Shown one piece after another: positions 3,620 through 40,481 of a stretch of 64,000 nucleotides of DNA. The stretch is from positions 124,001 through 188,000 of the IMG/VR virus record IMGVR_UViG_3300048672_001051; one strand, 5' to 3'. Within the stretch, counting starts at the first letter, position 1; every line of letters begins with the position of its first letter. Under the pieces are notes generated by a model. The model had not been told where the DNA came from. It worked only from the letters and a program-made list of their open reading frames with translations, and made no database searches. Both the position numbers and the translations under genes were made by a program.

Positions 3620-4729
3620 CTAAGTGCAGGTTTTTAAACAACGTAAAACTGCTTGTGGGTATAAAGTCTTGAAGTGATCTTCAAGATTAAAATTTGGATC
3701 TTGTTTAAGCTTAAATAAAAAAGCTTTGCAAGGGTAATGTTTAACAGATTCTGCAAAATCTTTAGCAGAAAGAGCTGAGTCTATGCTGTTAAAAATAGTA
3801 TAAACATCTAAATAAAATTTATCTAAAGTGCTAAGTAATGTATCTATACAAAATTTATACTCAGGACAATAAGCAAGATACTCATGATATTCACCGCTGA
3901 GACATAATTCAATAGCTCTAACTGGTGTTAAAAAGTTACCTTTCAAATGATGTACTTTTAAATATGCATCAGATTTAACTTTAAGACGTAAGTTGTTAAC
4001 ATCTCTTAAAACAAAACCTTCTTGAAGATCTGGTAATAAATTTGCTGCTAAAACAATACTATCAAAAGTTGTAAAAGAATACTTTAAAGGCCTGTGAACA
4101 TTTAAATCTAATGCTATAGTATCAAGAATATCAGTAGTTGTATCATATCCACTTATGTTATTAAAACAACCTAAAAGAAATATTTTAGGTTCTTCGTACA
4201 TATGAACAACTTTATTATCCATAGTGCACAATTCAAAACAATACGTAAATTGTTTATCAAGCTTACTGTAAAATACTGATATGTCTTGACCTGTAGTTTC
4301 AGTGAAAGTTTTAATAAACAAATCTTTAAAAGAAATTAAAGATTCTTTTTCAAACATTGCACTTAACTGTTGGACAGGTGATTCACCATTAGGTGTACCA
4401 TTAGTACCAATTTCAAAAGACTCTGTCAGTTCATTATACCAAACGCCAATAATAGAACCATCTTCTTTAGATTCAATGGTGCAGTTTTCAAATTGAAATT
4501 TAAGATCATTTTCAGGAAATTCTCCTAAATTAAAAAATCTTGGAAACATTCGGCGGACAATTTTCATATCAGACTTACGTACAACAGTGCCACGACAATT
4601 ATGAACAATGGCAGATTCTCTAGGACTTTTTAATTGGTCATAGCTTAAAAGTATATGATCACCGTAATCACGGATATTTACAGATAAATCTGTTAAAGTT
4701 TGAAGTAATGGCTGTAATAAAATATTCAT
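3620..4729 (-). CDS. T4 Rnl1-like RNA ligase
   Basis: Nucleotidyltransferase motifs SKEDGS, CFELCT, EGFVLRD, LKVKSDAY. Confidence 0.85.
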   Translation of the reverse strand: MNILLQPLLQTLTDLSVNIRDYGDHILLSYDQLKSPRESAIVHNCRGTVVRKSDMKIVRRMFPRFFNLGEFPENDLKFQFENCTIESKEDGSIIGVWYNELTESFEIGTNGTPNGESPVQQLSAMFEKESLISFKDLFIKTFTETTGQDISVFYSKLDKQFTYCFELCTMDNKVVHMYEEPKIFLLGCFNNISGYDTTTDILDTIALDLNVHRPLKYSFTTFDSIVLAANLLPDLQEGFVLRDVNNLRLKVKSDAYLKVHHLKGNFLTPVRAIELCLSGEYHEYLAYCPEYKFCIDTLLSTLDKFYLDVYTIFNSIDSALSAKDFAESVKHYPCKAFLFKLKQDPNFNLEDHFKTLYPQAVLRCLKTCT

Positions 4730-4735
4730 AAAATC

Positions 4736-5665
4736 TCAACGAAAAGAACAATTATATCTAGACAATGATCTTGAAAGATCGGGTGATTGTAAATTAAAAA
4801 TTGCAATATATTGTGCAAGAGAATAATAGTCTGCAGGTTGTTTAAAAAACCAAGTTAAAAATAATTGCTGTCTGGAGTAATTATAACCAAACATTTTATA
4901 ATAGATGTCGTGTTCATCGAGCAATAATTGTAGAAGCTTATCGGAATAATTTCTTCGAAAAATACTGACAATTAGTGTAAAACTTGTTTTAGTATATAAG
5001 TTAGATAAGCAAATAAGCTTCCTAGCTCTATCAGCATCAATACGTCGAGTTAGTTGTACAAAAATTAAATAATGCGTAATCTTATCTAGCCCGAGATATT
5101 CTTCAAAAGGTAAACTTGTAACTACCACAGGCATATTATATTGCTGCAAAGAATCGGCTAAGCCTGCATAGTAAAGCTCTGCAACCTTTCGATACTTAGG
5201 TCTCTCTGTATTATATAAATTTAATAAATAATTATTAGTATCAGTAGTTATTGAAGCTAATTTATTCATATTATAACGTCTAACAGCACTACCTTTTCTG
5301 TAAGAACTGGCAGCTCTAATTTTAAGAATAGGTATTAAATGCTGCAAGTTTGTCATCAAATATTCATAAAAAGCAGCATTTAAAGTTTTAGTCAAACCTT
5401 TAATTGTTATACCATACTCTTGAAAAAATTTCTGATAAACAGTTGGAAAATATAGTGTAGGTTGAATGCCAAGGCGGTTAAGCGCATTGGAGCCGTAATT
5501 TTGCAATTGCCGCATTATTATATGAGCAGTTTGAGTAATTGAATAAGAGTTAAAAGGAAAACTTAAGAGTGGAGTTTGAGTGTCAACAAGAAGCACATCT
5601 AATCTAAATAATAGACGTGCTTCGTCACAGCTGACTACCTGAACTCTAAAAGGTAGAGTAGACAT
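4736..5665 (-). CDS. Hypothetical protein
   Basis: 309-aa ORF in operon, no recognised motif. Confidence 0.7.
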   Translation of the reverse strand: MSTLPFRVQVVSCDEARLLFRLDVLLVDTQTPLLSFPFNSYSITQTAHIIMRQLQNYGSNALNRLGIQPTLYFPTVYQKFFQEYGITIKGLTKTLNAAFYEYLMTNLQHLIPILKIRAASSYRKGSAVRRYNMNKLASITTDTNNYLLNLYNTERPKYRKVAELYYAGLADSLQQYNMPVVVTSLPFEEYLGLDKITHYLIFVQLTRRIDADRARKLICLSNLYTKTSFTLIVSIFRRNYSDKLLQLLLDEHDIYYKMFGYNYSRQQLFLTWFFKQPADYYSLAQYIAIFNLQSPDLSRSLSRYNCSFR

Positions 5666-7899: not shown

Positions 7900-8269
7900 A
7901 ACAATACAACAATTACATGACACTTAGCCAAGCTGATTGTTTACCTTGACGCCTTGCATGCTTTTTACGATCACGTAAGTTACACATTCTATAAGGAAAA
8001 CAGCATCCAAATTTACAAGCAGCTTGGGGGAATATCTGAACGTTTAACGCCATAAGCTTTCAAAGTCAGACAAGCCCAAAGCTTTCAGCAATGCCGTCAC
8101 CATCAAACACACCCAGACCATAGCCAGCAGTCTTTGCATGAGCAGGTGAAGCAAGTACACTATACTGCATAAAAATACCTCTTTGTTTGTGATAATTAAA
8201 TGAGTACTAAAAGTACACGTTGTATTTGTGCAATTAAGCACAAAGCAGTTGTTTATTTCAAACAACTGC

Positions 8270-8364
8270 TGGCGGTAAGTGTGGGGTACGATCCCACAAC
8301 CCGATTCATCATCAGGCTCTAGTTTTCAGGACTAGTGCAATTATTCCATTTCTGCCAACTTACC
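8270..8364 (-). tRNA. tRNA-Ser(TGA)
   Basis: CTAGT-CC-TGA-AA-ACTAG; long variable arm; G73; T-loop ATCGTAC. Confidence 0.9.
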
Positions 8365-8368
8365 GTTG

Positions 8369-8457
8369 TGGAAAAAGAGCTAGGATTCGAACCTAGGACA
8401 GCTCACGCACGACGGAGTCAAATTCCGTTGTGTTGAACCAGACTTCACCACTCTTCT
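8369..8457 (-). tRNA. tRNA with TTG (Gln) anticodon on a class II long-variable-arm body
   Basis: ACGGA-AT-TTG-AC-TCCGT; 15-nt extra arm; 3-bp D stem; T73; CCA. Confidence 0.8.
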
Positions 8458-8460
8458 ATT

Positions 8461-8537
8461 TGGTGCGGAAAGCGGGACTCGAACCCGCAGCATCTGAAAT
8501 CTAAATCCAGCGTGTTTGCCAATTTCACCATTTCCGC
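8461..8537 (-). tRNA. tRNA-Leu(TAG) with short variable loop
   Basis: CTGGA-TT-TAG-AT-TTCAG; 5-nt variable loop ATGCT; A73; CCA. Confidence 0.9.
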
Positions 8538-8540
8538 AAA

Positions 8541-8615
8541 GGTACATCGTAATGGATTCGAACCATTGACCTACTCCTTGTAAGGGAGCCGCGCTACCAA
8601 CTGCGCTAACGATGC
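8541..8615 (-). tRNA. tRNA-Val(TAC)
   Basis: GCTCC-CT-TAC-AA-GGAGT; ends CC-T. Confidence 0.92.
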
Positions 8616-8670
8616 ATCTAACAAGAGCCTAACATAAGTATGCTCTTGTATTTTAAAAATTTATTAAAAA

Positions 8671-8765
8671 TGGTGTATGCAGTAGGAATCGAACCTACAC
8701 TGTGATCATTAATCCGGGATCGCGTTTACAGCGCGGTGCAACCAACCAATAGTTGCATTACATAC
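8671..8765 (-). tRNA. tRNA-Tyr(GTA)
   Basis: CT-GTA-AA loop; long variable arm; CCA. Confidence 0.92.
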
Positions 8766-10391: not shown

Positions 10392-10904
10392 ATGAATAAA
10401 CAAATATTATTAGATTTTATTAAACAAAATAAATCTTCTAGACAAATTGCAGAAGAACTTCAAGTATCACAAACAACTATTAGATATTGGCTTAAAAAAT
10501 ATAATTTAAAAACTAAAATATACACACAAATTATAGATAATAAAAAAGTTTGTACTAAATGCAATATTAATAAAGAAATTTCAGAATATTATTTTAAAAA
10601 TAAAAAACATAAAAATATGCACTCGGAATGTAAACTGTGTTTTAATTCTAGAATTACCGAGCAGTTTAGAGATTTAAAAACACAGTGTATAGAATACAAA
10701 GGATCTAAATGTCAAATTTGCGATTATAATAAATATCAAGGAGCTTTAGAATTTCATCATTTAGATCCAAATGAAAAAGATTTTGCTATTTCAGCAGCAA
10801 CTTCAAGGTTGTTAAATGAAACAATGAAAAAAGAATTAGATAAATGTATATTAGTTTGTTCGAATTGCCATAAAGAAATTCACGCTAAACTAGTTGATAT
10901 TTAA
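10392..10904 (+). CDS. Freestanding HNH homing endonuclease with N-terminal HTH
   Basis: RQIAEELQVSQTTIRYWL HTH; CQIC...LEFHHLDP...CSNCHKEIH. Confidence 0.88.
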   Translation: MNKQILLDFIKQNKSSRQIAEELQVSQTTIRYWLKKYNLKTKIYTQIIDNKKVCTKCNINKEISEYYFKNKKHKNMHSECKLCFNSRITEQFRDLKTQCIEYKGSKCQICDYNKYQGALEFHHLDPNEKDFAISAATSRLLNETMKKELDKCILVCSNCHKEIHAKLVDI

Positions 10905-11970: not shown

Positions 11971-12567
11971 ATGCTAAAAGAAACATCTTTAAAAGAGAAA
12001 ATAATTGATTTAAGAAATCAAAATTTAAGTTACAGAGAAATTTCTGAAAAACTTAACTGTACAAAAAGTGTAATATGCTATCACCTTACAGAAAAAGAAA
12101 AACAGAGAGTTGCAGATTCGACTAAAAAATTTAAAGAAAATAACCCTTTAAGTACAAAATTAACTCAATTTACAAGAGAGCAAGCAAAAGGACTTAATAA
12201 TAAAGCTCTTAAATTCTCTCAAGATAGAGAGATTAGAAAAGGCTTAAAATTACATAAAGATGGTGAAAATTATATAAATTATAAAAATCTTTATGAAGAG
12301 TTAATAAAAAAGCCTTATTGTTATTTAACTGGTGAAAGTGTTGATTTAACAAAGTCAGCAGATTATCAACTAGATCATATTATACCTATTTCAAAAAATG
12401 GTAGTTCTACTCTAGATAATATGGGGTTAACAACTAAAGCAGCTAATAAAGCTAAAAGCGATCTAACTTTAGAAGAGTTTTTTGATTTATGCGCAAGTGT
12501 TATTGTTCATAATAATTTAATGCCTTTAGTGGAGGCAAAACTTGCCAATAAAATATTAGCAAAATAA
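11971..12567 (+). CDS. Freestanding HNH homing endonuclease with N-terminal HTH
   Basis: LSYREISEKL HTH; CYLTG...LDHIIPISKNG...NMGLTTKAANKAK. Confidence 0.88.
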   Translation: MLKETSLKEKIIDLRNQNLSYREISEKLNCTKSVICYHLTEKEKQRVADSTKKFKENNPLSTKLTQFTREQAKGLNNKALKFSQDREIRKGLKLHKDGENYINYKNLYEELIKKPYCYLTGESVDLTKSADYQLDHIIPISKNGSSTLDNMGLTTKAANKAKSDLTLEEFFDLCASVIVHNNLMPLVEAKLANKILAK

Positions 12568-13117: not shown

Positions 13118-13206
13118 TGGTCCGGCCGGTGGGACTTGAACCCACAATGTGCTGTAGCACGCTCGATTATGAGTCGAGTCCATTTAACCAATTCTGGCAC
13201 AGCCGG
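13118..13206 (-). tRNA. tRNA(CAT), Ile2-like anticodon arm on a class II long-variable-arm body
   Basis: CTCGA-CT-CAT-AA-TCGAG; extra arm GTGCT-ACA-GCAC; 3-bp D stem; A73; CCA. Confidence 0.85.
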
Positions 13207-13240: not shown

Positions 13241-13999
13241 ATGACTACATTACCAAAATATTACATTACAACTCAACATGAAATTGACAACATGAAATCA
13301 AATTCTTTAATTTTTATTAATTGTGAGTATTGCAATACAGAGTTTTCACTGCAAAAGAAGTATTTAACATTACAGCTTAAAAATCAAAACACTTACAGAA
13401 CAACATGCAGTGGAAGTTGTTTTATAAAGCTTAAATCAATAGACTCTAAAGTAATTACAAATTGTAAAACATGCGATAAAGAAATTACTAAAACAAAAAA
13501 AGAAATAGAAGGATCTAAGTCAGGTTTTGTTTTTTGCTCTAGTTCTTGTGCAGCTAAAACAAATAATATCACAAGTAAATTAAAATACTCAATTAAAAAT
13601 TGTTTAAACTGTCTTGTAGATTATAAACCTACAAGATGTAGAGATAGTGGAACATGTTCTCAATTTTGTTTAATGGAGTATGGCATGAAATCAAGAAAAT
13701 TATCAGACGTAGTTAAAAGAACTCATTCAAATAAATACGACGGCGTTAGAAGTAATGCAAGGCTTTACGCTAAATACCACTATTTACCAAAATGTGCACT
13801 ATGTAATTATGATAAACATTTTGAAGTTTGTCATATAAAAGCTTTAACTAATTTTAATAATAATGATTCATTATTTGAAATTAACAATAAAACTAATTTA
13901 ATCCATTTATGTCCAAATTGTCATTGGGAGTTTGATCACAATTTAATACAGCTTGAAACTATAGTTAAAGCACAAGTAGAAAGTTTGCTAGTCTTGTAG
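13241..13999 (+). CDS. Freestanding HNH homing endonuclease with Zn-finger repeats
   Basis: Multiple CxxC; CALC...EVCHIK...LCPNCHWEFDH. Confidence 0.88.
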   Translation: MTTLPKYYITTQHEIDNMKSNSLIFINCEYCNTEFSLQKKYLTLQLKNQNTYRTTCSGSCFIKLKSIDSKVITNCKTCDKEITKTKKEIEGSKSGFVFCSSSCAAKTNNITSKLKYSIKNCLNCLVDYKPTRCRDSGTCSQFCLMEYGMKSRKLSDVVKRTHSNKYDGVRSNARLYAKYHYLPKCALCNYDKHFEVCHIKALTNFNNNDSLFEINNKTNLIHLCPNCHWEFDHNLIQLETIVKAQVESLLVL

Positions 14000-14667: not shown

Positions 14668-14741
14668 TGGAGCGGTGTGGCAGATTCGAACTGCCAACTA
14701 TTGGTTGGAAGCCAAGGTGCTGACCGTTACACTACAGTCCC
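14668..14741 (-). pseudogene. tRNA-Gly(TCC) with non-pairing (chimeric) acceptor stem
   Basis: D, anticodon (CT-TCC-AA) and T arms normal; 5' GGGACTG pairs with 3' ACACCGC at only 2 of 7 positions. Confidence 0.75.
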
Positions 14742-17475: not shown

Positions 17476-18165
17476 TTAATTTATTAAATCTAGCGTGCTT
17501 TTAACAAAATACAAATCTTGCAAAGATTTTTCAATATCTTTTAATTGAGCTTCATGTCTAAGACGTGGTGAAATACATTCTAAAATATTATTAAAGTATT
17601 CAGAGTCAGACAAACAACGACTATAAAAATCAATGTAAACTTGAGTAATAAGTTTACTTAGTTTTAATAGATTCTTTTCTGTATTATCATTGATTTTAAA
17701 AACTCTAGAGTAATTTTCTGAAATACACATTGTTGGAAAATATTTTAAATCAGTAACTAAGTTTTCATACCAAAAATCATAATTAAAAATATTTTCAGGT
17801 GTTAAAAATACTATAGAGTTAATTTTTTCATCTGTTTCTTTTAAAGCTTTTTCCCACTGCTCTTCTTCAGTTAATTTTAAAAAATTATTTATACGTTTTC
17901 TAGATTTGTAATTTTCTTCAAGTCTATTTTCTATATAAACATTTTCATAATATTGAAGGCACCTTTCTGGTGTTTGTACATCTTTATAGTACTCTGTAAA
18001 AGGAATGTGCCTGTAAAATTGAACAGACTCTACTGGATTACCTTCTACAAAATCAACTCCATTCCCTATAGTAAATAAAAAATGGCTTAATACATCAATC
18101 GGTTTTGAAAAACCTGCTGTATATTTAATTTGAGTTTCAGTTACATATTGAATTAAATAACTCAT
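17476..18165 (-). CDS. Hypothetical protein
   Basis: 229-aa ORF. Confidence 0.7.
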   Translation of the reverse strand: MSYLIQYVTETQIKYTAGFSKPIDVLSHFLFTIGNGVDFVEGNPVESVQFYRHIPFTEYYKDVQTPERCLQYYENVYIENRLEENYKSRKRINNFLKLTEEEQWEKALKETDEKINSIVFLTPENIFNYDFWYENLVTDLKYFPTMCISENYSRVFKINDNTEKNLLKLSKLITQVYIDFYSRCLSDSEYFNNILECISPRLRHEAQLKDIEKSLQDLYFVKSTLDLIN

Positions 18166-18186
18166 TTTTAAATTAACCTGGAATAT

Positions 18187-18244
18187 TGGTCGGCGCAGTC
18201 GGAATCGAACCGACGGTGTACCATTACGATGTACGCGATTCGAA
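18187..18244 (-). pseudogene. 3' half (33-76) of a class II-bodied tRNA with TCG (Arg) anticodon
   Basis: T-TCG-AA-TCGC, long arm, GTCGG-TTCGATT-CCGAC, TGCGCCG-A-CCA. Confidence 0.8.
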
Positions 18245-18253
18245 CTAAGAATT

Positions 18254-18280
18254 TGGTATCACGAACGGGATTCGAAACTG
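18254..18280 (-). pseudogene. Degenerate tRNA 3' end fragment
   Basis: TTCGAAT T-loop plus acceptor strand and ACCA. Confidence 0.55.
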
Positions 18281-18288
18281 TACTATAT

Positions 18289-18339
18289 TGGTGTGGGTAG
18301 GGAGAGTCGAACTCCCAAGGCCGAAACCTGTCAGATTTT
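18289..18339 (-). pseudogene. 3' half (35-76) of a tRNA-Leu-like gene
   Basis: AA-AA-TCTGA, AGGT-TTCG-GCCT arm, T arm, TACCCAC-A-CCA. Confidence 0.75.
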
Positions 18340-18526: not shown

Positions 18527-19285
18527 ATGAATCAATTATCAAAAGAACAATTATATAGTTTATATATAAATTATTATCAAACAAATATAAGTAAATTAAA
18601 AACTGCTAAAGAAACTAAAATAGATCGCAGTACAGTAAGAAAATACTTTAATTTATTTCAAACTTCTAATATTGAAGATATTATAAATACAACACACTCA
18701 GAACTTGCTTCATTAAAAGACTATATAAATAGCTGGTCAGTAGTTGAAAAACGTTGTTATACTTATATTTTAGCACAATATTTTGGGGATGGCTATATAA
18801 ATAAAACAGCCAGAACTTGGAAATTAAGGATTTCCAATGATAAAAAATATGAAAATATAAACTGTCTTATAGAAGATTGTCTTACTACTTTATTTCCAAA
18901 CAATTGTGTATCAAGGATTAATAAAACAGGGTGTTGGGATATTTGCGTTCACAGTAAAAAACTCCCTATTTTATTTCCTCACTTAGGGCAGGGTAAAAAA
19001 CATGAAAGAAAAATAAGTTTAACAACAGAACAATTAGAACTATTAAAAATGTATCCTAAGGATTTTATCTTAGGTTGTTTACATTCCGATGGTGCTAAGT
19101 GTAAAAGAAAAACAACAAATCACTTTTATCAATTTACTAATTTATCTTTAGATATAAAAGAATTTTTTGAAATTGCTTGTAGTTGTATAGGCATACCACT
19201 TAAAAATATTAAAGCTAAAAATGTTTATATTTATAAAAGAGAATATATAAATATTATAGATTCATTTTATATTGATAAATCTTAA
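18527..19285 (+). CDS. Freestanding LAGLIDADG-type homing endonuclease with N-terminal HTH
   Basis: YILAQYFGDGYI and FILGCLHSDG motifs. Confidence 0.8.
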   Translation: MNQLSKEQLYSLYINYYQTNISKLKTAKETKIDRSTVRKYFNLFQTSNIEDIINTTHSELASLKDYINSWSVVEKRCYTYILAQYFGDGYINKTARTWKLRISNDKKYENINCLIEDCLTTLFPNNCVSRINKTGCWDICVHSKKLPILFPHLGQGKKHERKISLTTEQLELLKMYPKDFILGCLHSDGAKCKRKTTNHFYQFTNLSLDIKEFFEIACSCIGIPLKNIKAKNVYIYKREYINIIDSFYIDKS

Positions 19286-21291: not shown

Positions 21292-23829
21292 TTAACGATA
21301 CATTTTTGTTAAATATTTTGTTAACAAAAACTGTGCGTGTAAATCAGAACGCTCTTCTGCGTACTCAATTTCTAACTCAGTTGAAAGCTCTTGTAAACGT
21401 TTATCAATTTTAAGTAATAAAGAGTCAAGGCTAAAAGTCATTTCATTTAAACCTACCACTTTTAAACCTGCCAAAGTTTTTAAACGTGATATGGCAACAT
21501 AACCCTGACCTTTTTCAAAAACTTTTGATAAATCTATCTCAGCTTCGTCTAAACTCATACCTTGACAGTTTGACATTACAAAGCCATTTTGAATAAAATT
21601 TCCAGCATTTGGAACCTCAACACATTGCGATTCAAGTTCAATATTGACTAAATTTTCAATTCGAACGTAATAAAAATCTAACAAGTCAGAACAAATTGAA
21701 GGTACATAATCTCTAGTGACGTAACCTCTTTTTAAACTAGCTTTATACATTGTATAAGATATGTATTTATTCGTATACCAATTTAAAAGAGTTTCCTTAG
21801 TTACTGGAACTCTACTATTAGAATCAGTTCTGATAATAGTGTAATTTAAAAGTCTTTGTTGATTAAATTTATTTATAAATCCGACATAATCTCTAAAAAG
21901 CTTGCAGTACTTACCATAAATATATAAATAAGTAATGTTATCTTTTTTTGATATTGTACAAGCAATCCCTACACGTAATAAGACTTGCTGTACAAATTGA
22001 CAAACAGTAAAAGATTTATTAGCAAATTCAATGTGATCTACTTTACTTTGTTTAATATTTACAGTGCCGTCTTCATAAAGACCTTTTAAAAAAGATAACT
22101 GAACAGAAAGGGGTGATTGTTTTATAATATGAGGAACTTGTTTTAAATTTGAAACTAATTCAGGACACCACTCATTCAGTATATAATGAGAAAGATGACG
22201 AGAACAGACTTCAAATTGATAAAAATCTTTACCACCCACATTTAAAATTCTAATAGGGTTATCAACGACATTAAATAAATTAATACATAATTGTTTAAAA
22301 CGTTCTACTGTTTCAATATGTTTTTTAGTTAAGCTAAAAGAACTTTTTCTAACAGTTCCGTCAGCTAAAAGCAATCCTAAGAATTCTGAGAAATTTTCAT
22401 CAAGTACTTCTGGTAATTTGTATTTTACAGTGCGTACATCAAATATTTTTGAAGTCGCAGATGACAATTTTAAATAAGGACTATTACATGTTTGATTAAG
22501 TTTCAGTTTAAGCCATTGACCTACAATAAGCTCTTTAGCTTCTACATAATTCCAAGAATCTCCAGTAAAAGCTAAGCACTTGTGAGAATCAGTGACCTTA
22601 ATACTATAGTTACGCTCACAAATAATTTCTTTTCCAGTTAGTAAGTGGTTATTAACTTTATTAACATAAGGCAACACTTCAAACTCAGTTTGTATTGCGC
22701 CTGACTCTTGTATATCTTTAATCTGCAATAAGCCTTGAGTAGTATTAACATAAGTGTCAGGATGAATACACTTATGGACTGTTATAGCGTAAGCAAGCGT
22801 TAAAGGCACTTGAGTATAAGTAGCGGTGTTACCAGCGCCATTGTTTTCAAAACGCCATTCAACAGGGTCGGCAGTCACTGTTAATCCTGTTGTTAATTTA
22901 ACTTTAGGATAATATTGACCATTAAATCTTTCAAAACCTACGACTGTACCTTGAGACCCATTAGCGTACTGTCCATTTATGTTGTCATTTTTAACAAACA
23001 TAACTTTAGTGTTAAGTTTTAATTCAAGAACTTCAGGAGCTTTAATATTTGCTTTTAACATATCTACAAATATAGATTTACCTGTAGTTTTAGCCTTATT
23101 AGTATACACAATACCTGGCAGGGCATCAAAATGTTGTTTATTAATAGCTGTAACGTCTCTGTTGTGAGTATACAACTTTAAAGGATTTGTGAGCGTATTT
23201 GAAGAAGTCGCAGCAATAATATCAATGTGCTCTTGAGTGACAGTTTGAGATCTTATTGCATTTAAAATATCATTTAACTTATCACCATCAGCTTGACGAT
23301 ATTGTTTTGTTAAGTAGCAAGACTTAAAATTTGCTCTAACCCAAACAGGTGACATAAAGCAAAATTTATCGCGATTGGCTTCACCATTAGTACTAACTGG
23401 TGGTAATTGTAGCCCATCACCAGCTAATATAACTTGAAGACCGCCAAATGGTTTTTCACTCTGCCGTAGCCTACGTAGTACAAAATCAATTGCTTCAAAC
23501 TGATCTTTGTGCAACATAGATATTTCATCAATAACTAAAACGCGAGCTTTAATTATCTTCATGTATTTTATTTGATTTTTCTTAATCTTGTCGACATGTG
23601 TTTGTGTAATGTGGCTTTTAATTCCAATGCCAGTCCAAGAGTGAATTGTCTGACCATCAATATTTGTAGCTGCAATACCTGTAGACGCAGTAATAGCGTA
23701 AGGCACGTTACGAGCTTTAAGATAGTCTAAATACACTTTTAAAGTATAAGATTTACCAACACCTGCAGAGCCAGTTAAAAATACATTGGCACCTGTTTTA
23801 AGAATATTTAAAGCAGTTGTTTGATCCAT
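21292..23829 (-). CDS. Pif1-family SF1B helicase precursor containing an intein
   Basis: GSAGVGKS, IDEISM, GDGLQLPP, AITVHK|CQG, YVAISR. Confidence 0.92.
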   Translation of the reverse strand: MDQTTALNILKTGANVFLTGSAGVGKSYTLKVYLDYLKARNVPYAITASTGIAATNIDGQTIHSWTGIGIKSHITQTHVDKIKKNQIKYMKIIKARVLVIDEISMLHKDQFEAIDFVLRRLRQSEKPFGGLQVILAGDGLQLPPVSTNGEANRDKFCFMSPVWVRANFKSCYLTKQYRQADGDKLNDILNAIRSQTVTQEHIDIIAATSSNTLTNPLKLYTHNRDVTAINKQHFDALPGIVYTNKAKTTGKSIFVDMLKANIKAPEVLELKLNTKVMFVKNDNINGQYANGSQGTVVGFERFNGQYYPKVKLTTGLTVTADPVEWRFENNGAGNTATYTQVPLTLAYAITVHKCIHPDTYVNTTQGLLQIKDIQESGAIQTEFEVLPYVNKVNNHLLTGKEIICERNYSIKVTDSHKCLAFTGDSWNYVEAKELIVGQWLKLKLNQTCNSPYLKLSSATSKIFDVRTVKYKLPEVLDENFSEFLGLLLADGTVRKSSFSLTKKHIETVERFKQLCINLFNVVDNPIRILNVGGKDFYQFEVCSRHLSHYILNEWCPELVSNLKQVPHIIKQSPLSVQLSFLKGLYEDGTVNIKQSKVDHIEFANKSFTVCQFVQQVLLRVGIACTISKKDNITYLYIYGKYCKLFRDYVGFINKFNQQRLLNYTIIRTDSNSRVPVTKETLLNWYTNKYISYTMYKASLKRGYVTRDYVPSICSDLLDFYYVRIENLVNIELESQCVEVPNAGNFIQNGFVMSNCQGMSLDEAEIDLSKVFEKGQGYVAISRLKTLAGLKVVGLNEMTFSLDSLLLKIDKRLQELSTELEIEYAEERSDLHAQFLLTKYLTKMYR
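21568..22770 (-). mobile_element. 401-aa intein with LAGLIDADG endonuclease
   Basis: Starts CIHPDT after TVHK, ends FVMSN before Cys+1; FLGLLLADG and FLKGLYEDG motifs. Confidence 0.92.
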
Positions 23830-24823: not shown

Positions 24824-24900
24824 TGGAGCTTGTGCAGAGACTTTAACTCTGTATCACTGGATTTGCAATCCAGTCCCTCGAACACTTCGGGTTAACAAGC
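24824..24900 (-). tRNA. tRNA-Cys(GCA)
   Basis: CTGGA-TT-GCA-AA-TCCAG; atypical T-loop TTAAAGT; T73; CCA. Confidence 0.85.
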
Positions 24901-24904
24901 ATGT

Positions 24905-25114
24905 TTAATGGATGTTTAAAACATACCACAAAATACAACCTGCAACAATTGAAGAAGCTGCAGAAACTAAAAAACTTGCGAAATATGATTTAAAATCACA
25001 ATCTTTTTTTAAAACTTCAGGTGGAGTAGTTTGAGGGCTGCTGGATGCAATTCCCAAATCGTTACCCAGACCATCCCACATTTCAAAACAATTTTGAGAG
25101 TAAATGTTAAACAT
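24905..25114 (-). CDS. Small membrane protein
   Basis: C-terminal hydrophobic helix. Confidence 0.55.
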   Translation of the reverse strand: MFNIYSQNCFEMWDGLGNDLGIASSSPQTTPPEVLKKDCDFKSYFASFLVSAASSIVAGCILWYVLNIH

Positions 25115-25130
25115 AAAAATACCTTAAAAA

Positions 25131-25261
25131 GTACAAGGCCAGGACTCGAACCTGGAACCAGCTGATTGGTCGATGTAAACCTTTACTACAACACTCTATG
25201 GAGGTTAAAAGTGCAAAAGTTACTTTTTGTCGGCTGCTCTACCGATTGAGCTACCCTGTAC
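25131..25261 (-). ncRNA. tRNA-shaped RNA with about 60-nt insert in place of the anticodon loop; candidate Y (Yrl) RNA
   Basis: Acceptor (G)TACAGGG/CCTTGTA(C), canonical D and T arms, no CCA, followed by U run; starts 11 nt after TROVE stop. Confidence 0.75.
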
Positions 25262-25272
25262 TATTTTAAAAC

Positions 25273-26736
25273 TTAAACTGAAAGTGTATTAATTAACACT
25301 TCAGCATCACCAGACATGCTAAGGTATTGTAAGATGTTGTCGCTATAGCCTGCAAACTGAGTCCAACCATTAGATGGCTGTGCAGCAGATGTAGGTGAGC
25401 GGCCCATATTAAAAGCAAATTTATGCTCAATACTTCTAAAAAAGCTGTCAAAAGAATTGCCAGTGGCTAAAGACTGCAGCTGCATGTCTGAAAACATGAA
25501 CACAGTGTCTAATTCAACATTTGGAATGTTGTCAACAATACTTGCTAAATTAGTTCCACCGCCGACATCAAAGTGTTTAATCTTATTAATGATATCTTGA
25601 TAAGAATCACTAACAGACACTTCAATATTTTTAGAGAATGTGCCAAAGGTTGTAATGTAAACTGGTATGTTGTAATTATGTAATGATTTACAAATCACAG
25701 CAGCCAGAAAAGCACTATTATTCATTGGAATGCCCTGCATTGACAAGCTTGCGTCAACAACTAACCAACAAGCTCGTTTAGAAACTTGTGGAACATTGTC
25801 AATAGCGTAGCCCAAAGCTTGCACTAACTCGCTTTTGTACGATTGCGTTTGGTCGATAGCTGAATAAAACTGATATGGATACAGTTTTGCTCTAGCTACT
25901 GAACGACGATCGACAAGTTTTGAGCGAATTAAACTTTGAATTTCAGTTAAGCTTTCTGAAGCAACAAGCATACTAATAGACATGCGTTCGATATTAGCTA
26001 AGTTTTTAAGCAAAGCTTGATAACCGAGTTTATTGTTGCGTAGAAGGCTTAACCAACTGTCAATTCGAGCTTGAGGTGTTGAATTTTGCGAACTATCACT
26101 AAGCAAAACTTCGTGAGTGTCAGGTTTTTCTAAAGTATTATTTAAAATACATTTAAAAATACGTGACTGCTCAGAATCCTTAGGTTGAGGCCTTGCTGTT
26201 AAAATAAGAAACTTCAAATTGACATTGTTAATCTTTCGGTTATATTTGCCAAATTGATAAGCATCAAACTTATTTAAACCAACTTCCAAAGATTTTTTTA
26301 CAATTTTAGGAAGTTCTTTAGGCAGCAAACCGCCTGCAAGTAAATTACCAACTAGTTTCAACATGTCATCGACACGATAAAAATACTCGCCAATCAACTT
26401 ATAAGAGTTTGGAGGAAACTCAGTACAAGTTAAAAGATAGCTAGTTAGTAAATCTAAAGGTGCTTGTTTTAACCCAAGTATATGCCGTGCAAAAATAGCC
26501 AGATTAAAAACAAATTTACTTTCACCTGCAGCGTGTAAGTCTGCAAGTAGTTTAATAACAACAGTCTGAAGTTCAGTCTGTGTGTGGTAAAAAGTATCAC
26601 CTTTAATTAAACTGTTCAACACAATGTTTAAAAGTTGTTGTTTAGAGCTTAAAGTTAGTTGAGGATTCCCCTCAAGAGAAATTGACATTTTTGTCATTTG
26701 AACATCGCCTTTTAAAAGGGAAATGCTGACTTTCAA
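25273..26736 (-). CDS. Ro60/TROVE domain protein with C-terminal vWA
   Basis: FGKYNRK, THEVLLS, YQALLKNLANI, LYPYQFYSA, VVDASLSM, GGTN, FSDMQ. Confidence 0.85.
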   Translation of the reverse strand: MKVSISLLKGDVQMTKMSISLEGNPQLTLSSKQQLLNIVLNSLIKGDTFYHTQTELQTVVIKLLADLHAAGESKFVFNLAIFARHILGLKQAPLDLLTSYLLTCTEFPPNSYKLIGEYFYRVDDMLKLVGNLLAGGLLPKELPKIVKKSLEVGLNKFDAYQFGKYNRKINNVNLKFLILTARPQPKDSEQSRIFKCILNNTLEKPDTHEVLLSDSSQNSTPQARIDSWLSLLRNNKLGYQALLKNLANIERMSISMLVASESLTEIQSLIRSKLVDRRSVARAKLYPYQFYSAIDQTQSYKSELVQALGYAIDNVPQVSKRACWLVVDASLSMQGIPMNNSAFLAAVICKSLHNYNIPVYITTFGTFSKNIEVSVSDSYQDIINKIKHFDVGGGTNLASIVDNIPNVELDTVFMFSDMQLQSLATGNSFDSFFRSIEHKFAFNMGRSPTSAAQPSNGWTQFAGYSDNILQYLSMSGDAEVLINTLSV

Positions 26737-38826: not shown

Positions 38827-39273
38827 TTAAGGCTCCAACCGTAGCTGCTCTTTTAAAAAAGAATAGTTAGGATATTTTTCAAATTGAATACAATGCCAAA
38901 CATTAGGCGTATCGGAATATTGCAGGATATTAGTAATAGTTCCAACACGCCCATGATACATTGAACCTGGATAATAAATTTTCACGTTATCATTAATTTT
39001 AAAAGACCGTGGTTGAGACGATGCAATTAAAATTTTTAAGAAATCTTCAGAGACTACTCGACAAGGCGGACTTCCAACTATTAAAGAAACAGTATTTTCA
39101 AAAATATCTAAACATTCAGTATTAGATATTTTTTTGAAAATACTGTAGCTACAAATTTCAAGTACACCATCAACTAAACGTTGTTTAGGTTGAATATAGT
39201 GCTGACCTTTCTTAACAAATAAGCTGAGAGGGTTTGTTAGAGTACTCATAAGAAGACCTTTAGAATAAATCAA
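38827..39273 (-). CDS. Hypothetical protein
   Basis: 148 aa; C-terminal KOW/SH3-like GRVGTITNI. Confidence 0.6.
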
Positions 39274-40481
39274 GCAAAGATTTTAATCCGTGCAATATTT
39301 TTCTTACCAAGTTGAACTACAACAGTTTGACCAGCTGTAAAAACAACAGTTGGTGTAGCAATAACACCATCAACTTTTACAGCACTATTTTTTAAAGCGT
39401 CCTTAGCCATTGCAGAGTTTTTAGCTAATTTAGCTCGTAGTAGTACACTACCAATAAACAACTGCTCCTGTCCTTCTAAAGATAGGCTGACTTCAGGCAT
39501 GTCCTCTGGTAGCTCACCATCCATGATGCGGTTGCCTGAGCTCTTGTGAGCATTGGCGGCGGCATCGGCGTCGTGGAAGCGTTCGATCAACTCTAATGCC
39601 AAGATGCGCTTGATCTCTTGCGGGTTACGGCCTGCTTGCATTTCGGCAAGTAGCGATTCGACTTCGCTCATGCTGCGGAAACTGAGCAGCTCGAAGTAAC
39701 GGGCGATCAGTGTGTCTGGCATGGAGAGGATTTTTTGATACATGCTGCCTGCGCTGTCGTGCACACCAATATAGTTGCCCAGTGACTTTGACATTTTTTG
39801 TACGCCGTCAAGTCCTTCTAGGATTGGGACGGTGATACAGACTTGTGGGGTTTGGTCGTAGCGCGATTGCAGGGTGCGACCCATCAATAGGTTAAAGGTT
39901 TGATCGGTTCCACCAAGTTCGACGTCAGCCTTGAGTGCAACAGAATCATAGCCTTGTACTAATGGGTACAAAAACTCGTGAATTGCAATCGGTTGTTGGT
40001 CGTTAAAGCGCTTACTAAAGTCATTACGTTCCATCATGCGGGAGACGGTTTGCTGACTGGCTAGACGAATCAGGTCGGCGGCGGACATGGCATCAAACCA
40101 TGTGCTGTTAAACACGACTTCGGTTTTGGCGGGATCCAGAATTTTAAACACTTGTTCTTGGTAGCTCTTGGCATTTTCGGCCACTTGTTCGCGAGTCAGT
40201 GGTGGGCGGGTAGCGCTTTTGCCTGTGGGATCGCCAATCATGCCGGTGTAGTCGCCAATCAAGAAGAGGACGTGGTGGCCAAGTTCTTGGAAGGTGCGTA
40301 GTTTGTTGATCAATACGGTATGACCCAAATGCAGGTCTGGTGCGGTGGGATCGAATCCGGCTTTGATGCGCAGCGGGCGATTTTCTTGCAGTTTTTTGAG
40401 CAGGTCTTCGCGCGAGATGATTTCGCTGGTGCCGCGTTCGATCAGGGCCAGTTGTTGCTCGGCTGGGAGAAAGGAGGTCAT
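39270..40481 (-). CDS. tyrS: Tyrosine--tRNA ligase, GC-mosaic, Moraxellaceae-like
   Basis: [34 protein letters not shown]; C-terminal S4 domain. Confidence 0.97.

What the first reader, a model, noticed from the sequence alone, without database searches (positions are those of the whole stretch)
8369..8457. Gln anticodon on a class II (Leu/Ser/Tyr-type) tRNA body
Seen: anticodon TTG with A32, a 15-nt extra arm capped by a GNRA loop (GC-GTGA-GC), a 3-bp D stem with A13.A22, and U73. Established: long variable arms normally occur only in Leu, Ser, Tyr and Sec tRNAs. The same swap appears in the CAT tRNA (13118) and the split TCG tRNA (18187). Inference: either long-arm tRNAs that evade host nucleases, or mis-acylating tRNAs (e.g. 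Ser or Leu at CAA codons).
Basis: partly seen in the sequence, partly recalled or inferred. Interest (0 to 1): 0.62.

Follow-up and report, generated by a model that had tools for sequence, protein, structure and literature searches.

The report
Phage glutamine tRNA with inserted extra arm
A jumbo phage of a freshwater Moraxellaceae-like bacterium carries a glutamine tRNA whose short variable loop has grown into a small hairpin; similar enlarged glutamine tRNAs turn up in many unrelated phages and almost never in bacteria, so it is an odd viral variant of a normal tRNA and not a recoding device.

Summary
Window 8369-8457 (minus strand) is an 89-nt tRNA gene with anticodon UUG, A32, U73, an encoded CCA, a 3-bp D stem with A13.A22, and a 15-nt variable region whose only pairing is GC-GUGA-GC.

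The interpretation of a Leu/Ser/Tyr-type body is not supported. The 3-bp D stem with A13.A22 is the normal tRNA-Gln D arm. The closest tRNAs among 980 compared are ordinary short-loop viral tRNA-Gln(UUG) genes. The A1-U72 pair matches tRNA-Gln of the inferred host lineage (Moraxellaceae-like, which has GlnRS). It lacks the main identity marks of Leu (A73), Ser (G1-C72, G2-C71, G73, long arm) and Tyr (A73, G1-C72).

CAA codons sit at invariant Gln positions of the phage TyrRS, and the genome reads well under the standard code.

About 14 different variable-region hairpins occur on tRNA-Gln(UUG) in about 28 viral or metagenomic contigs. Only 3 such genes were found across 185,579 bacterial and archaeal species genomes.

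Best reading: a host-GlnRS-charged tRNA-Gln that decodes CAA and carries a tolerated, possibly adaptive, extra hairpin. Charging, expression and the role of the hairpin are untested. Its acceptor stem and U73 are atypical for tRNA-Gln.

The parts
8369..8457 (-). tRNA(UUG) gene, 89 nt, CCA encoded, discriminator U73
   Evidence: ARAGORN; Rfam RF00005 48.6 bits
8419..8421 (-). anticodon UUG (tRNA positions 34-36) inside loop AUUUGAC
8397..8411 (-). 15-nt variable region. The mini-hairpin GC-GUGA-GC lies at 8401-8408. This is about 10 nt more than in the nearest short-loop tRNA-Gln relatives.
8434..8444 (-). enlarged 11-nt D loop (5 nt before GG, 4 after). It is identical to that of the long-arm tRNA-Gln of the 243-kb viral contig behind L025.
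   Evidence: pattern scan
8270..8765 (-). tight tRNA array Tyr(GUA)-Val(UAC)-Leu(UAG)-Gln(UUG)-Ser(UGA). Spacers between the last four genes are 3-4 nt, so the tRNA(UUG) sits in the middle of one likely transcript.
8244..8270 (-). terminator-like hairpin directly after the last tRNA of the array
   Evidence: consensus scan only
39270..40481 (-). phage-encoded bacterial-type TyrRS. Used here to infer the host and for the CAA codon test.
   Evidence: TIGR00234 376 bits; 91-92% identity to a chromosomal TyrRS of a Moraxellaceae-like MAG; codon test

Best explanation
This is a phage tRNA-Gln(UUG) built on a class I glutamine body. It belongs to the subfamily with A1-U72, G9 and a GUG(A)/(A)CAC D stem. 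Compared with its nearest relatives it has about 10 extra nucleotides in the variable region, forming a 2-bp GNRA-capped mini-hairpin, and 4 extra nucleotides in the D loop.

It lies in a five-tRNA array and is probably co-transcribed with its neighbours and processed (inferred). It is probably charged with glutamine by the host GlnRS (inferred). GlnRS is a class I enzyme that reads the anticodon, G10 and a weak 1-72 pair, and by established structural knowledge it leaves the variable region facing solvent. The tRNA would then supply decoding of CAA, the phage's preferred Gln codon.

The extra hairpin is one case of a recurrent, almost virus-only remodelling of the variable region of class I tRNAs. 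Its role is not shown. It may simply be tolerated, or it may protect the phage tRNA from host factors that target tRNA.
For: Real tRNA: with all tertiary invariants present.

Gln-type body:
- E. coli tRNA-Gln has the same 3-bp D stem with A13.A22.
- The nearest neighbours among 980 unique tRNAs are short-loop viral tRNA-Gln genes: L206 43/53, L145 41/53, L153 40/53. On the 34 positions not used in the fetch pattern they score 24, 22 and 21. The best class II neighbours reach 37/53 and 36/53.
- The classifier gives Gln 13.7 bits, with Trp next at 3.3.

Host:
- The phage TyrRS is 91-92% identical to a chromosomal TyrRS in a gyrB/AdeT/anmK context, and 77-85% identical to Moraxellaceae, Alkanindiges and Acinetobacter proteins.
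- tRNA-Gln of that genome and of 4 of 5 relatives has A1-U72.
- 12 of 12 relatives carry glnS above its cut-off.
- The phage has no Glu/Gln synthetase domain.

Decoding:
- 20 of 24 CAA/CAG codons of the phage TyrRS lie in Gln-majority columns, and 12 of the CAA codons lie in columns that are Gln in 119 of 119 homologues.
- Long ORFs read under the standard code (table 11) cover 86% of the genome. CAA makes up 75% of Gln codons. The phage tRNA set is mostly U34 tRNAs for A-ending codons.

Recurrence:
- 25 IMG/VR contigs hold tRNA-Gln(UUG) genes of 78-93 nt, mostly with U1-A72, G2-C71, G3-C70 and G73/A73. Their variable hairpins are unrelated to one another.
- Further cases occur in metagenome contigs L258/L274 and L296.
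- Only 3 real hits were found in 185,579 species genomes.

Tolerance of a long arm by GlnRS: an amber tRNA-Ser becomes a Gln acceptor after two acceptor-pair changes (PMC9976931, section 17).
Against: - G2.U71, A3-U70 and U73 depart from the acceptor identity set of E. coli and host tRNA-Gln (G2-C71, G3-C70, G73 or A73), so charging could be poor.
- On the positions not used for fetching, the Gln signal is weak (4.4 bits, against Trp 5.9).
- The predicted cloverleaf is 6.8-9 kcal/mol above the minimum-energy fold, about the 97th percentile of 980 tRNAs.
- No orthologue in a related phage could be found.
- No RNA data exist: one DNA run only.
- The hairpin has only 2 base pairs.
Confidence: 0.6

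Rival explanations
1. It is a class II (Leu/Ser/Tyr-derived) tRNA that acquired a UUG anticodon and is charged with Ser, Leu or Tyr, so that CAA is ambiguously or wrongly decoded during infection.
For: - The variable region is long, and the D loop has class II-like geometry (5 nt before GG, 4 after, the pattern seen in 14 Ser tRNAs).
- The variable-region sequence resembles that of the host tRNA-Tyr (C-GC-GAAA-GC-UUC), and a naive whole-length alignment ranks host tRNA-Tyr first.
- The D stem alone scores slightly better as Leu than as Gln.
- The phage encodes its own TyrRS, and U35 is shared with tRNA-Tyr.
Against: - U73 excludes the key A73 of Leu and Tyr and the G73 of Ser. A1-U72 and G2.U71 exclude the G1-C72 and G2-C71 conserved in bacterial tRNA-Ser, and the G1-C72 of bacterial tRNA-Tyr. 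The arm has only 2 bp (identity rules from PMC9976931).
- Classifier scores are Leu -19.7, Ser -2.0 and Tyr -1.7 bits. The window's true Ser, Leu and Tyr tRNAs score +17.4, +14.3/+3.4 and +5.7.
- The nearest neighbours are class I tRNA-Gln genes with the same G9 and GUGA/ACAC D stem.
- 12 CAA codons sit at invariant Gln positions of TyrRS.
Confidence: 0.07
2. It is a decaying or non-translational tRNA gene. It may be poorly charged or uncharged, and either a pseudogene in the making or a decoy that soaks up a host tRNA-targeting nuclease or modification enzyme.
For: - The acceptor stem is AU-rich with a G.U pair and lacks G2-C71 and G3-C70. U73 matches no Gln rule.
- It has one of the lower Rfam scores among the window's tRNAs, well below those of its neighbours Leu (67) and Val (71).
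- The cloverleaf is disfavoured relative to the minimum-energy fold, at the 97th percentile.
- No conserved orthologue was found.
- The phage is equipped for conflict over tRNA: an Rnl1-type RNA ligase and a Ro60/TROVE protein with a tRNA-like RNA next to it.
Against: - Every invariant tertiary nucleotide, the 7-nt anticodon loop with U33 and A37, the T loop and the encoded CCA are intact.
- It sits between functional-looking tRNAs with 3-4-nt spacers.
- Several other tRNAs of this AT-rich phage have equally weak stems.
- The anticodon fits the phage's U34 tRNA set and its CAA bias.
Confidence: 0.2
3. The extra hairpin is an adaptive counter-defence feature. The tRNA is a working tRNA-Gln, and its remodelled variable region and D loop make it resistant to a host nuclease, or another factor, that inactivates the host tRNA-Gln during infection.
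For: - Unrelated hairpins were gained independently on tRNA-Gln in about 14 viral lineages, against near absence in bacterial genomes.
- The same kind of GNRA-capped mini-hairpin occurs on viral Thr, Lys, Asn and Met tRNAs.
- There is published precedent for the variable region as a battleground. [quoted passage not shown]
- An Rnl1-type tRNA repair ligase lies 4 kb away.
Against: - No nuclease is known that recognises the variable loop of tRNA-Gln.
- Most viral tRNA-Gln(UUG) genes keep a short loop: at least 119 contigs against 25.
- Hairpin length and sequence are not conserved, which also fits neutral insertions that are merely tolerated.
Confidence: 0.25

Closest known systems
Bacterial tRNA-Gln(UUG) (E. 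coli glnU/glnW; Moraxellaceae-type with A1-U72)
   Same: Anticodon UUG with A37, G10, a 3-bp D stem with A13.A22, T loop UUCGAAU, a weak 1-72 pair (A1-U72, as in the inferred host lineage), and 7/5 acceptor/T geometry.
   Different: 15-nt instead of 5-nt variable region; 11-nt instead of 7-8-nt D loop; G2.U71 and A3-U70 instead of two G-C pairs; U73 instead of G/A73; A32/C38 instead of U32/U38.
Short-loop viral tRNA-Gln(UUG) of the A1-U72 / G9 / GUGA-ACAC type (loci L206, L145, L153)
   Same: A1-U72, U8-G9, an identical D stem, A26, an anticodon stem identical to L145 and a T arm identical to L206. Identity is 40-43 of 53 body positions.
   Different: They have 5-6-nt variable loops, 7-9-nt D loops, G-C-rich acceptor stems and G73.
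Long-arm viral tRNA-Gln(UUG) (loci L002-L026, L028-L030, L258, L274, L296)
   Same: UUG anticodon, Gln-type body and a variable-region hairpin. In several of them (L002, L028, L258, L296) it is a 2-3-bp stem capped by a GNRA loop of about the same size. L025 has the identical enlarged D loop.
   Different: The phages are unrelated. Most have the full U1-A72, G2-C71, G3-C70, G73/A73 set and a normal small D loop. Their hairpins differ in sequence and length (9-25 nt).
Class II tRNAs (bacterial Leu, Ser, Tyr)
   Same: Variable region longer than 10 nt, an enlarged D loop and a 3-bp D stem.
   Different: It lacks A73 (Leu, Tyr), G73 with G1-C72 and G2-C71 (Ser), and G1-C72 (Tyr). The arm has only 2 bp. 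Body positions score negative for all three.
Allo-tRNAs and nematode nev-tRNAs (long-arm tRNAs whose anticodon does not match their charging identity)
   Same: A long variable arm combined with an anticodon of a class I amino acid.
   Different: Allo-tRNAs have 8/4 or 9/3 acceptor/T geometry and Ser or Ala identity elements (PMC5389517), whereas this tRNA is 7/5. Nev-tRNAs carry Leu identity (own knowledge), and this tRNA has no Leu determinants.
Phage T5/T6 tRNA-Tyr in escape from retron-Eco7 and Septu
   Same: A phage-encoded tRNA whose variable region differs from the host's, sitting in a tRNA cluster interspersed with homing-endonuclease genes.
   Different: That case is a genuine class II tRNA with a demonstrated nuclease. 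Here the isotype is class I and no nuclease is known.

Membership tests
tRNA (Rfam RF00005) | Cloverleaf with 7-bp acceptor and 5-bp T stem, conserved U8, A14, G18G19, U33, T loop | tested here: met
   48.6 bits against a 29-bit gathering score, full model 1-71; ARAGORN 7/5 structure; invariants read directly
tRNA-Gln | Anticodon YUG with U35 and G36, purine 37 | tested here: met
   Loop AUUUGAC
tRNA-Gln | 3-bp D stem with A13.A22 and the G10-C25 pair | tested here: met
   GUG(A)/(A)CAC in the window. The same architecture is present in E. coli, host-lineage and viral tRNA-Gln.
tRNA-Gln | Weak first pair (U1-A72, or A1-U72 in the host lineage) | tested here: met
   A1-U72. The inferred host genome G001 and 4 of 5 relatives have A1-U72 in tRNA-Gln.
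tRNA-Gln | G2-C71 and G3-C70 plus discriminator G73 (A73 in G001) | tested here: not met
   G2.U71, A3-U70 and U73
tRNA-Gln | Class I variable loop of 4-5 nt | tested here: not met
   15 nt. This is the anomaly itself, shared with about 14 viral lineages.
tRNA-Gln | Glutaminylation by GlnRS | not testable with these tools
   Only context is available: glnS in 12 of 12 host relatives and none in the phage.
tRNA-Leu (class II) | A73; A15-U48 tertiary pair; Leu-type body | tested here: not met
   U73 and G15/C48. Body score is -19.7 bits. Identity rules from PMC9976931.
tRNA-Ser (class II) | G1-C72 and G2-C71, G73, long stable extra arm | tested here: not met
   A1-U72, G2.U71, U73 and a 2-bp arm. 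Body score is -2.0 bits. Rules.
tRNA-Tyr (bacterial class II) | A73, G1-C72, G34-U35, long arm | tested here: not met
   Only U35 and a Tyr-like mini-hairpin are shared. It has U73, A1-U72 and U34. Body score is -1.7 bits. Rules.
allo-tRNA | 8/4 or 9/3 acceptor/T-stem geometry with a long arm | tested here: not met
   7/5 geometry in ARAGORN and Rfam. Definition from PMC5389517.

The most novel reading that the evidence does not exclude
Hairpin insertion into the variable region is a convergent, adaptive trait of phage class I tRNAs (Gln above all, also Met/Ile-CAU, Ile-UAU, Thr, Lys, Asn, Glu). It would make them class II-shaped so that they escape a host tRNA-inactivating defence, or so that phage factors can tell them from host tRNAs, while they are still charged by the cognate class I-type recognition. 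This tRNA, with a co-expanded D loop, would be the most class II-like example.
Probability: 0.25. Interest if true: 0.75.

Novelty: new variant of a known kind. Interest (0 to 1): 0.48.

Why it matters
The rule that only Leu, Ser, Tyr and Sec tRNAs carry long variable arms is a textbook rule, and it underlies tRNA annotation and identity prediction. This case, together with the roughly 14 independent viral lineages found with it, shows that phages repeatedly break the rule for tRNA-Gln and for several other class I tRNAs, while their bacterial hosts almost never do. The reverse also occurs: 23 of 73 viral tRNA-Leu genes in the sample have only a 5-nt loop.

If the hairpins are adaptive, they mark a new front in the conflict over tRNAs between phages and bacterial defences. 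They would also offer natural examples of tRNA scaffolds that tolerate insertions, which is useful for tRNA engineering. If they are neutral, they measure how little GlnRS, EF-Tu and the ribosome care about this face of the tRNA.

In practice, the finding warns annotators not to read such genes as evidence of recoding.

Tried and rejected
1. GenBank phage searches with the tRNA region (megablast) and with the tRNA alone (blastn) found no match.
2. A search for related loci with the neighbouring RNA ligase found nothing.
3. An IMG/VR scan for the enlarged D loop plus the UUG anticodon gave 21 hits. Twenty were chance matches inside coding DNA, and only L025 was a tRNA.
4. A metagenome scan for the anticodon arm plus T arm with any variable length gave 84 loci, none of them an orthologue of this tRNA.
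5. I considered an alternative fold in which the variable region pairs with the 3' half of the D arm (predicted -23.5 against -16.7 kcal/mol, pair probabilities 0.77-0.97). I rejected it as a specific feature. Shuffling the 15 nt gives the same gap (mean 6.4), and 39% of shuffles do as well or better. L025, which has the same D loop, lacks the complementarity.
6. Naive global alignment to host tRNAs ranks Tyr, Pro, Ser and Gln close together and does not discriminate. I replaced it with a comparison by canonical tRNA position.
7. The first classifier result (Gln 13.7 bits) was partly circular, because the Gln training genes had been fetched with the anticodon-stem and T-arm motif. I therefore recomputed it without those positions and backed it with nearest neighbours.
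8. The phage nature of the two 182-184-kb MAG contigs that carry a long-arm tRNA-Gln could not be confirmed. Terminase_6N hits lie on other contigs.
9. Expression could not be tested. One DNA run from a freshwater metagenome holds the region and no RNA run does.
10. Six full-text literature searches found no description of long-arm tRNA-Gln in phages.
11. The large representative protein search, structure prediction and complex prediction were not needed and were not run.
12. Loci labelled as human gut metagenome are microbial contigs and were only scanned for tRNAs.

Full report
**What is at the coordinates**

The window is bases 124001-188000 of a 229,656-bp IMG/VR virus record estimated to be 98% complete. 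It has about 32% G+C. The one sequencing run that holds the region is a freshwater metagenome.

ARAGORN finds 15 tRNA genes, all on the minus strand. One of them is tRNA(ttg) at 8369-8457, 89 nt long. Rfam's tRNA model matches it end to end at 48.6 bits, against a gathering score of 29.

- anticodon loop AUUUGAC, with A32;
- U73 followed by an encoded CCA;
- a 3-bp D stem (GUG/CAC) flanked by A13 and A22;
- a 15-nt variable region whose only possible pairing is GC-GUGA-GC.

That hairpin is marginal. ARAGORN leaves it unpaired, and it contributes about 2 kcal/mol. All conserved tertiary positions are intact.

The gene sits inside a tight array, Tyr-Val-Leu(UAG)-Gln-Ser, with 3-4-nt spacers between the last four genes. 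A terminator-like hairpin follows the array.

**Is the body class II?**

The D-arm argument does not hold. E. coli tRNA-Gln, fetched from an annotated genome, has the same 3-bp D stem with A13.A22. So do tRNA-Gln genes of the inferred host lineage.

I parsed 980 unique tRNAs into canonical positions. They came from the viral loci, the host genome and the window.

A position-weight classifier over 53 body positions, leaving out the anticodon loop, D loop and variable region, has 81% leave-one-out accuracy. It calls this tRNA Gln at 13.7 bits, with Trp next at 3.3.

The Gln training genes had been fetched by a motif in the anticodon stem and T arm, so I repeated the test on the 34 positions outside that motif. 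The Gln signal then falls to 4.4 bits (Trp 5.9). The class II isotypes stay negative: Tyr -1.7, Ser -2.0, Leu -19.7. The window's own Ser, Leu and Tyr tRNAs score +17.4, +14.3/+3.4 and +5.7 on the same positions.

The clearest evidence comes from nearest neighbours. On both position sets the top three are ordinary short-loop viral tRNA-Gln(UUG) genes: L206, L145 and L153, with 43, 41 and 40 of 53 positions identical. They share A1-U72, U8-G9, the identical GUGA/ACAC D stem and A26. L145 has the same anticodon stem and L206 the same T arm, and all three have a 5-6-nt variable loop and G73.

So this tRNA is that body with four changes: about 10 nt added in the variable region, 4 nt added in the D loop, an AT-drifted acceptor stem, and U73.

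**Host and charging route**

The phage encodes a full-length bacterial TyrRS (TIGR00234, 376 bits). It is 91-92% identical to a TyrRS that sits in a chromosomal gyrB/AdeT/anmK context in a bacterial MAG. It is 77-85% identical to proteins named as Moraxellaceae, Alkanindiges and Acinetobacter. I take this as recent capture from the host lineage. That is an inference.

In that MAG, tRNA-Gln(UUG) has A1-U72, G2-C71, G3-C70, A73 and a 5-nt variable loop. Four of five relatives also have A1-U72. The phage tRNA therefore shares the lineage-specific first pair.

Twelve of twelve relatives carry glnS above its curated cut-off. The MAG itself is incomplete. The phage has no Glu/Gln synthetase domain. 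Charging, if it happens, would be by the host GlnRS.

GlnRS identity rests on the anticodon (U35, G36), the 10-25 pair, the acceptor pairs 1-72 to 3-70, and the discriminator base. A class II amber tRNA-Ser becomes a Gln acceptor after two acceptor-pair changes (PMC9976931), which shows that a long arm does not block GlnRS. It is established structural knowledge, not tested here, that class I synthetases approach from the side that leaves the variable region in solvent.

Against efficient charging stand G2.U71, A3-U70 and U73.

**Test of mis-decoding**

Long ORFs read under the standard code (table 11) cover 86% of the genome, and TAA is the commonest of the three stop codons at their ends. 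CAA makes up 75% of Gln codons. The phage tRNAs are mostly U34 species for A-ending codons, so a UUG tRNA fits the set.

In the phage TyrRS, aligned with 119 homologues, 20 of 24 CAA/CAG codons lie in Gln-majority columns. Twelve of the CAA codons lie in columns where all 119 homologues have Gln. A phage tRNA inserting Ser, Leu or Tyr at CAA would damage such sites.

The identity marks for those three amino acids are also absent. This test cannot exclude low-level ambiguity.

**Recurrence**

A pattern requiring the Gln-type anticodon arm, at least 13 intervening bases and the T arm hit 25 IMG/VR contigs. ARAGORN calls a tRNA-Gln(ttg) of 78-93 nt in 24 of the 25; in L005 the match lies at the end of the locus and was not called.

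Most have the complete Gln set: U1-A72, G2-C71, G3-C70, G73/A73 and the canonical D arm. Their variable hairpins have 3-7 bp and are unrelated in sequence, and most of these tRNAs fold into five-arm cloverleaves as their minimum-energy structure.

Several hairpins are capped by GNRA loops, as here: L002, L028, L258 and L296. L025, from a 243-kb contig, has the identical enlarged D loop. Metagenome contigs add further lineages, including arrays that hold both a 72-nt and an 83-nt tRNA-Gln(UUG).

These phages are not related to the one studied here.

The same pattern over one genome for each of 185,579 bacterial and archaeal species gave four hits. One was an artefact of masked bases. Two are an identical gene on 182-184-kb MAG contigs dense with tRNAs, a tmRNA and a CUA suppressor tRNA. 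One lies on a 3.4-kb contig.

Long-arm forms are therefore a minority, at most about one in six for this motif.

Among the other tRNAs in the same loci, variable regions of 9 nt or more also occur on Ile(UAU), Thr, Lys, Asn, Glu and Met(CAU) tRNAs. Conversely, 23 of 73 viral tRNA-Leu genes have a 5-nt loop with A73, like the window's Leu(UAG).

Six literature searches found no description of this.

**Mechanism and caveats**

Shown here:
- It is a real tRNA gene.
- Its body is Gln-type.
- Its first pair matches the host lineage's tRNA-Gln.
- CAA is used as Gln.
- The extra hairpin belongs to a recurrent trait that is almost confined to viruses.

Inferred: co-transcription with the array, charging by host GlnRS, and use on the ribosome.

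Unknown: what the hairpin does. A counter-defence role is plausible. Variable loops are proven targets of retron-Eco7 and Septu, and the distinctive variable loop of T5 tRNA-Tyr confers resistance (PMC13096335). This phage also carries an Rnl1-type RNA ligase and a Ro60-type protein close to the tRNA region. Neutral tolerance explains the data equally well.

The cloverleaf is predicted to be 6.8-9 kcal/mol less stable than an alternative fold, about the 97th percentile of 980 tRNAs. Shuffling the variable region gives the same gap, so this reflects the weak AU-rich stems and not a designed switch.

No orthologue and no RNA data were available, so a poorly charged or decoy tRNA cannot be excluded.

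**Verdict**

The class II swap and mis-acylation reading is not supported. The best explanation is a tRNA-Gln with an inserted extra arm: a new variant of a known kind and part of a wider, apparently undescribed viral habit of remodelling the variable region.

Noticed in passing
window 13118-13206 (-): tRNA(CAT) of 89 nt with a 16-nt variable region (4-bp stem, tetraloop), A73, C1-G72, a class II-like D arm and a possible A15-U48 pair. Its body scores weakly Leu-like (7.1 bits on all positions) and not Met-like. It may decode AUA or AUG; ATA makes up 32% of the phage's Ile codons. This is a better candidate than the Gln gene for a class II body with a class I anticodon. Long-arm Met(CAT) genes also occur in metagenome loci L294 and L296.
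   Followed up: partly
window 8461-8537 (-): tRNA-Leu(UAG) of 77 nt with a Leu-type body (14.3 bits) and A73 but only a 5-nt variable loop. 23 of 73 unique viral tRNA-Leu genes in the sampled loci share this short-loop form.
   Followed up: partly
window 25100-25275 (-), next to 25273-26736 (-): A tRNA-like RNA (acceptor, D and T arms) with a roughly 50-nt insert where the anticodon loop should be. ARAGORN with introns calls it 'tRNA-Stop(tta)'. Its fold z-score is -2.9. It lies directly downstream of a TROVE/Ro60 plus vWA protein gene and looks like a bacterial Y-RNA (YrlA-type) module carried by a phage. No Rfam family matched.
   Followed up: partly
window 39270-40481 (-): The phage-encoded TyrRS is 91-92% identical to a chromosomal Moraxellaceae-like TyrRS, indicating very recent capture from the host. 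The phage's own tRNA-Tyr (8671-8765, 95 nt) is highly divergent: Rfam 34.9 bits, and its cloverleaf lies 12 kcal/mol above the minimum-energy fold.
   Followed up: partly
window 3620-4729 (-): A T4 Rnl1-type RNA ligase (Pfam RNA_lig_T4_1, 4e-16) lies about 4 kb from the tRNA array. The adjacent 309-aa ORF (4736-5665) has no family match. A tRNA repair function is possible.
   Followed up: no
window 10392-10904 (+), 11971-12567 (+), 13241-13999 (+), 18527-19285 (+): ORFs on the opposite strand are interspersed among the tRNA genes. The first three have HNH endonuclease matches. The fourth has only a weak IS21-type transposase match (E 5e-4). The HNH genes recall the Seg/homing endonucleases of T-even tRNA regions.
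   Followed up: no
window 18150-18300 (-): Three pieces that look like tRNA T arms and 3' ends (ending ..ACCA) sit just downstream of tRNA-Leu(UAA). Neither ARAGORN nor Rfam calls a tRNA there, so the 'split TCG tRNA' is unconfirmed.
   Followed up: partly
window 24827-24900 (-) and 14679-14734 (-): Two further Rfam tRNA matches (41.1 and 33.1 bits) that ARAGORN does not call. The first has a GCA (Cys) anticodon loop and an odd D arm.
   Followed up: no
window 21292-23829 (-): A PIF1-type helicase gene interrupted by an intein with a LAGLIDADG domain.
   Followed up: no
L110, L151, L190, L197, L220 (viral and metagenome loci): tRNA-Ile(UAU) genes with 20-27-nt variable arms and A73 recur in unrelated viral contigs. 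They recall the nematode long-arm UAU tRNAs that are charged with Leu.
   Followed up: no
L012:9000-9075 compared with L003, L011, L017, L024 and L026: In one member of a group of related contigs, the tRNA next to the long-arm tRNA-Gln has anticodon CTA where its siblings have Trp(CCA). This may be an amber suppressor derived from tRNA-Trp.
   Followed up: no
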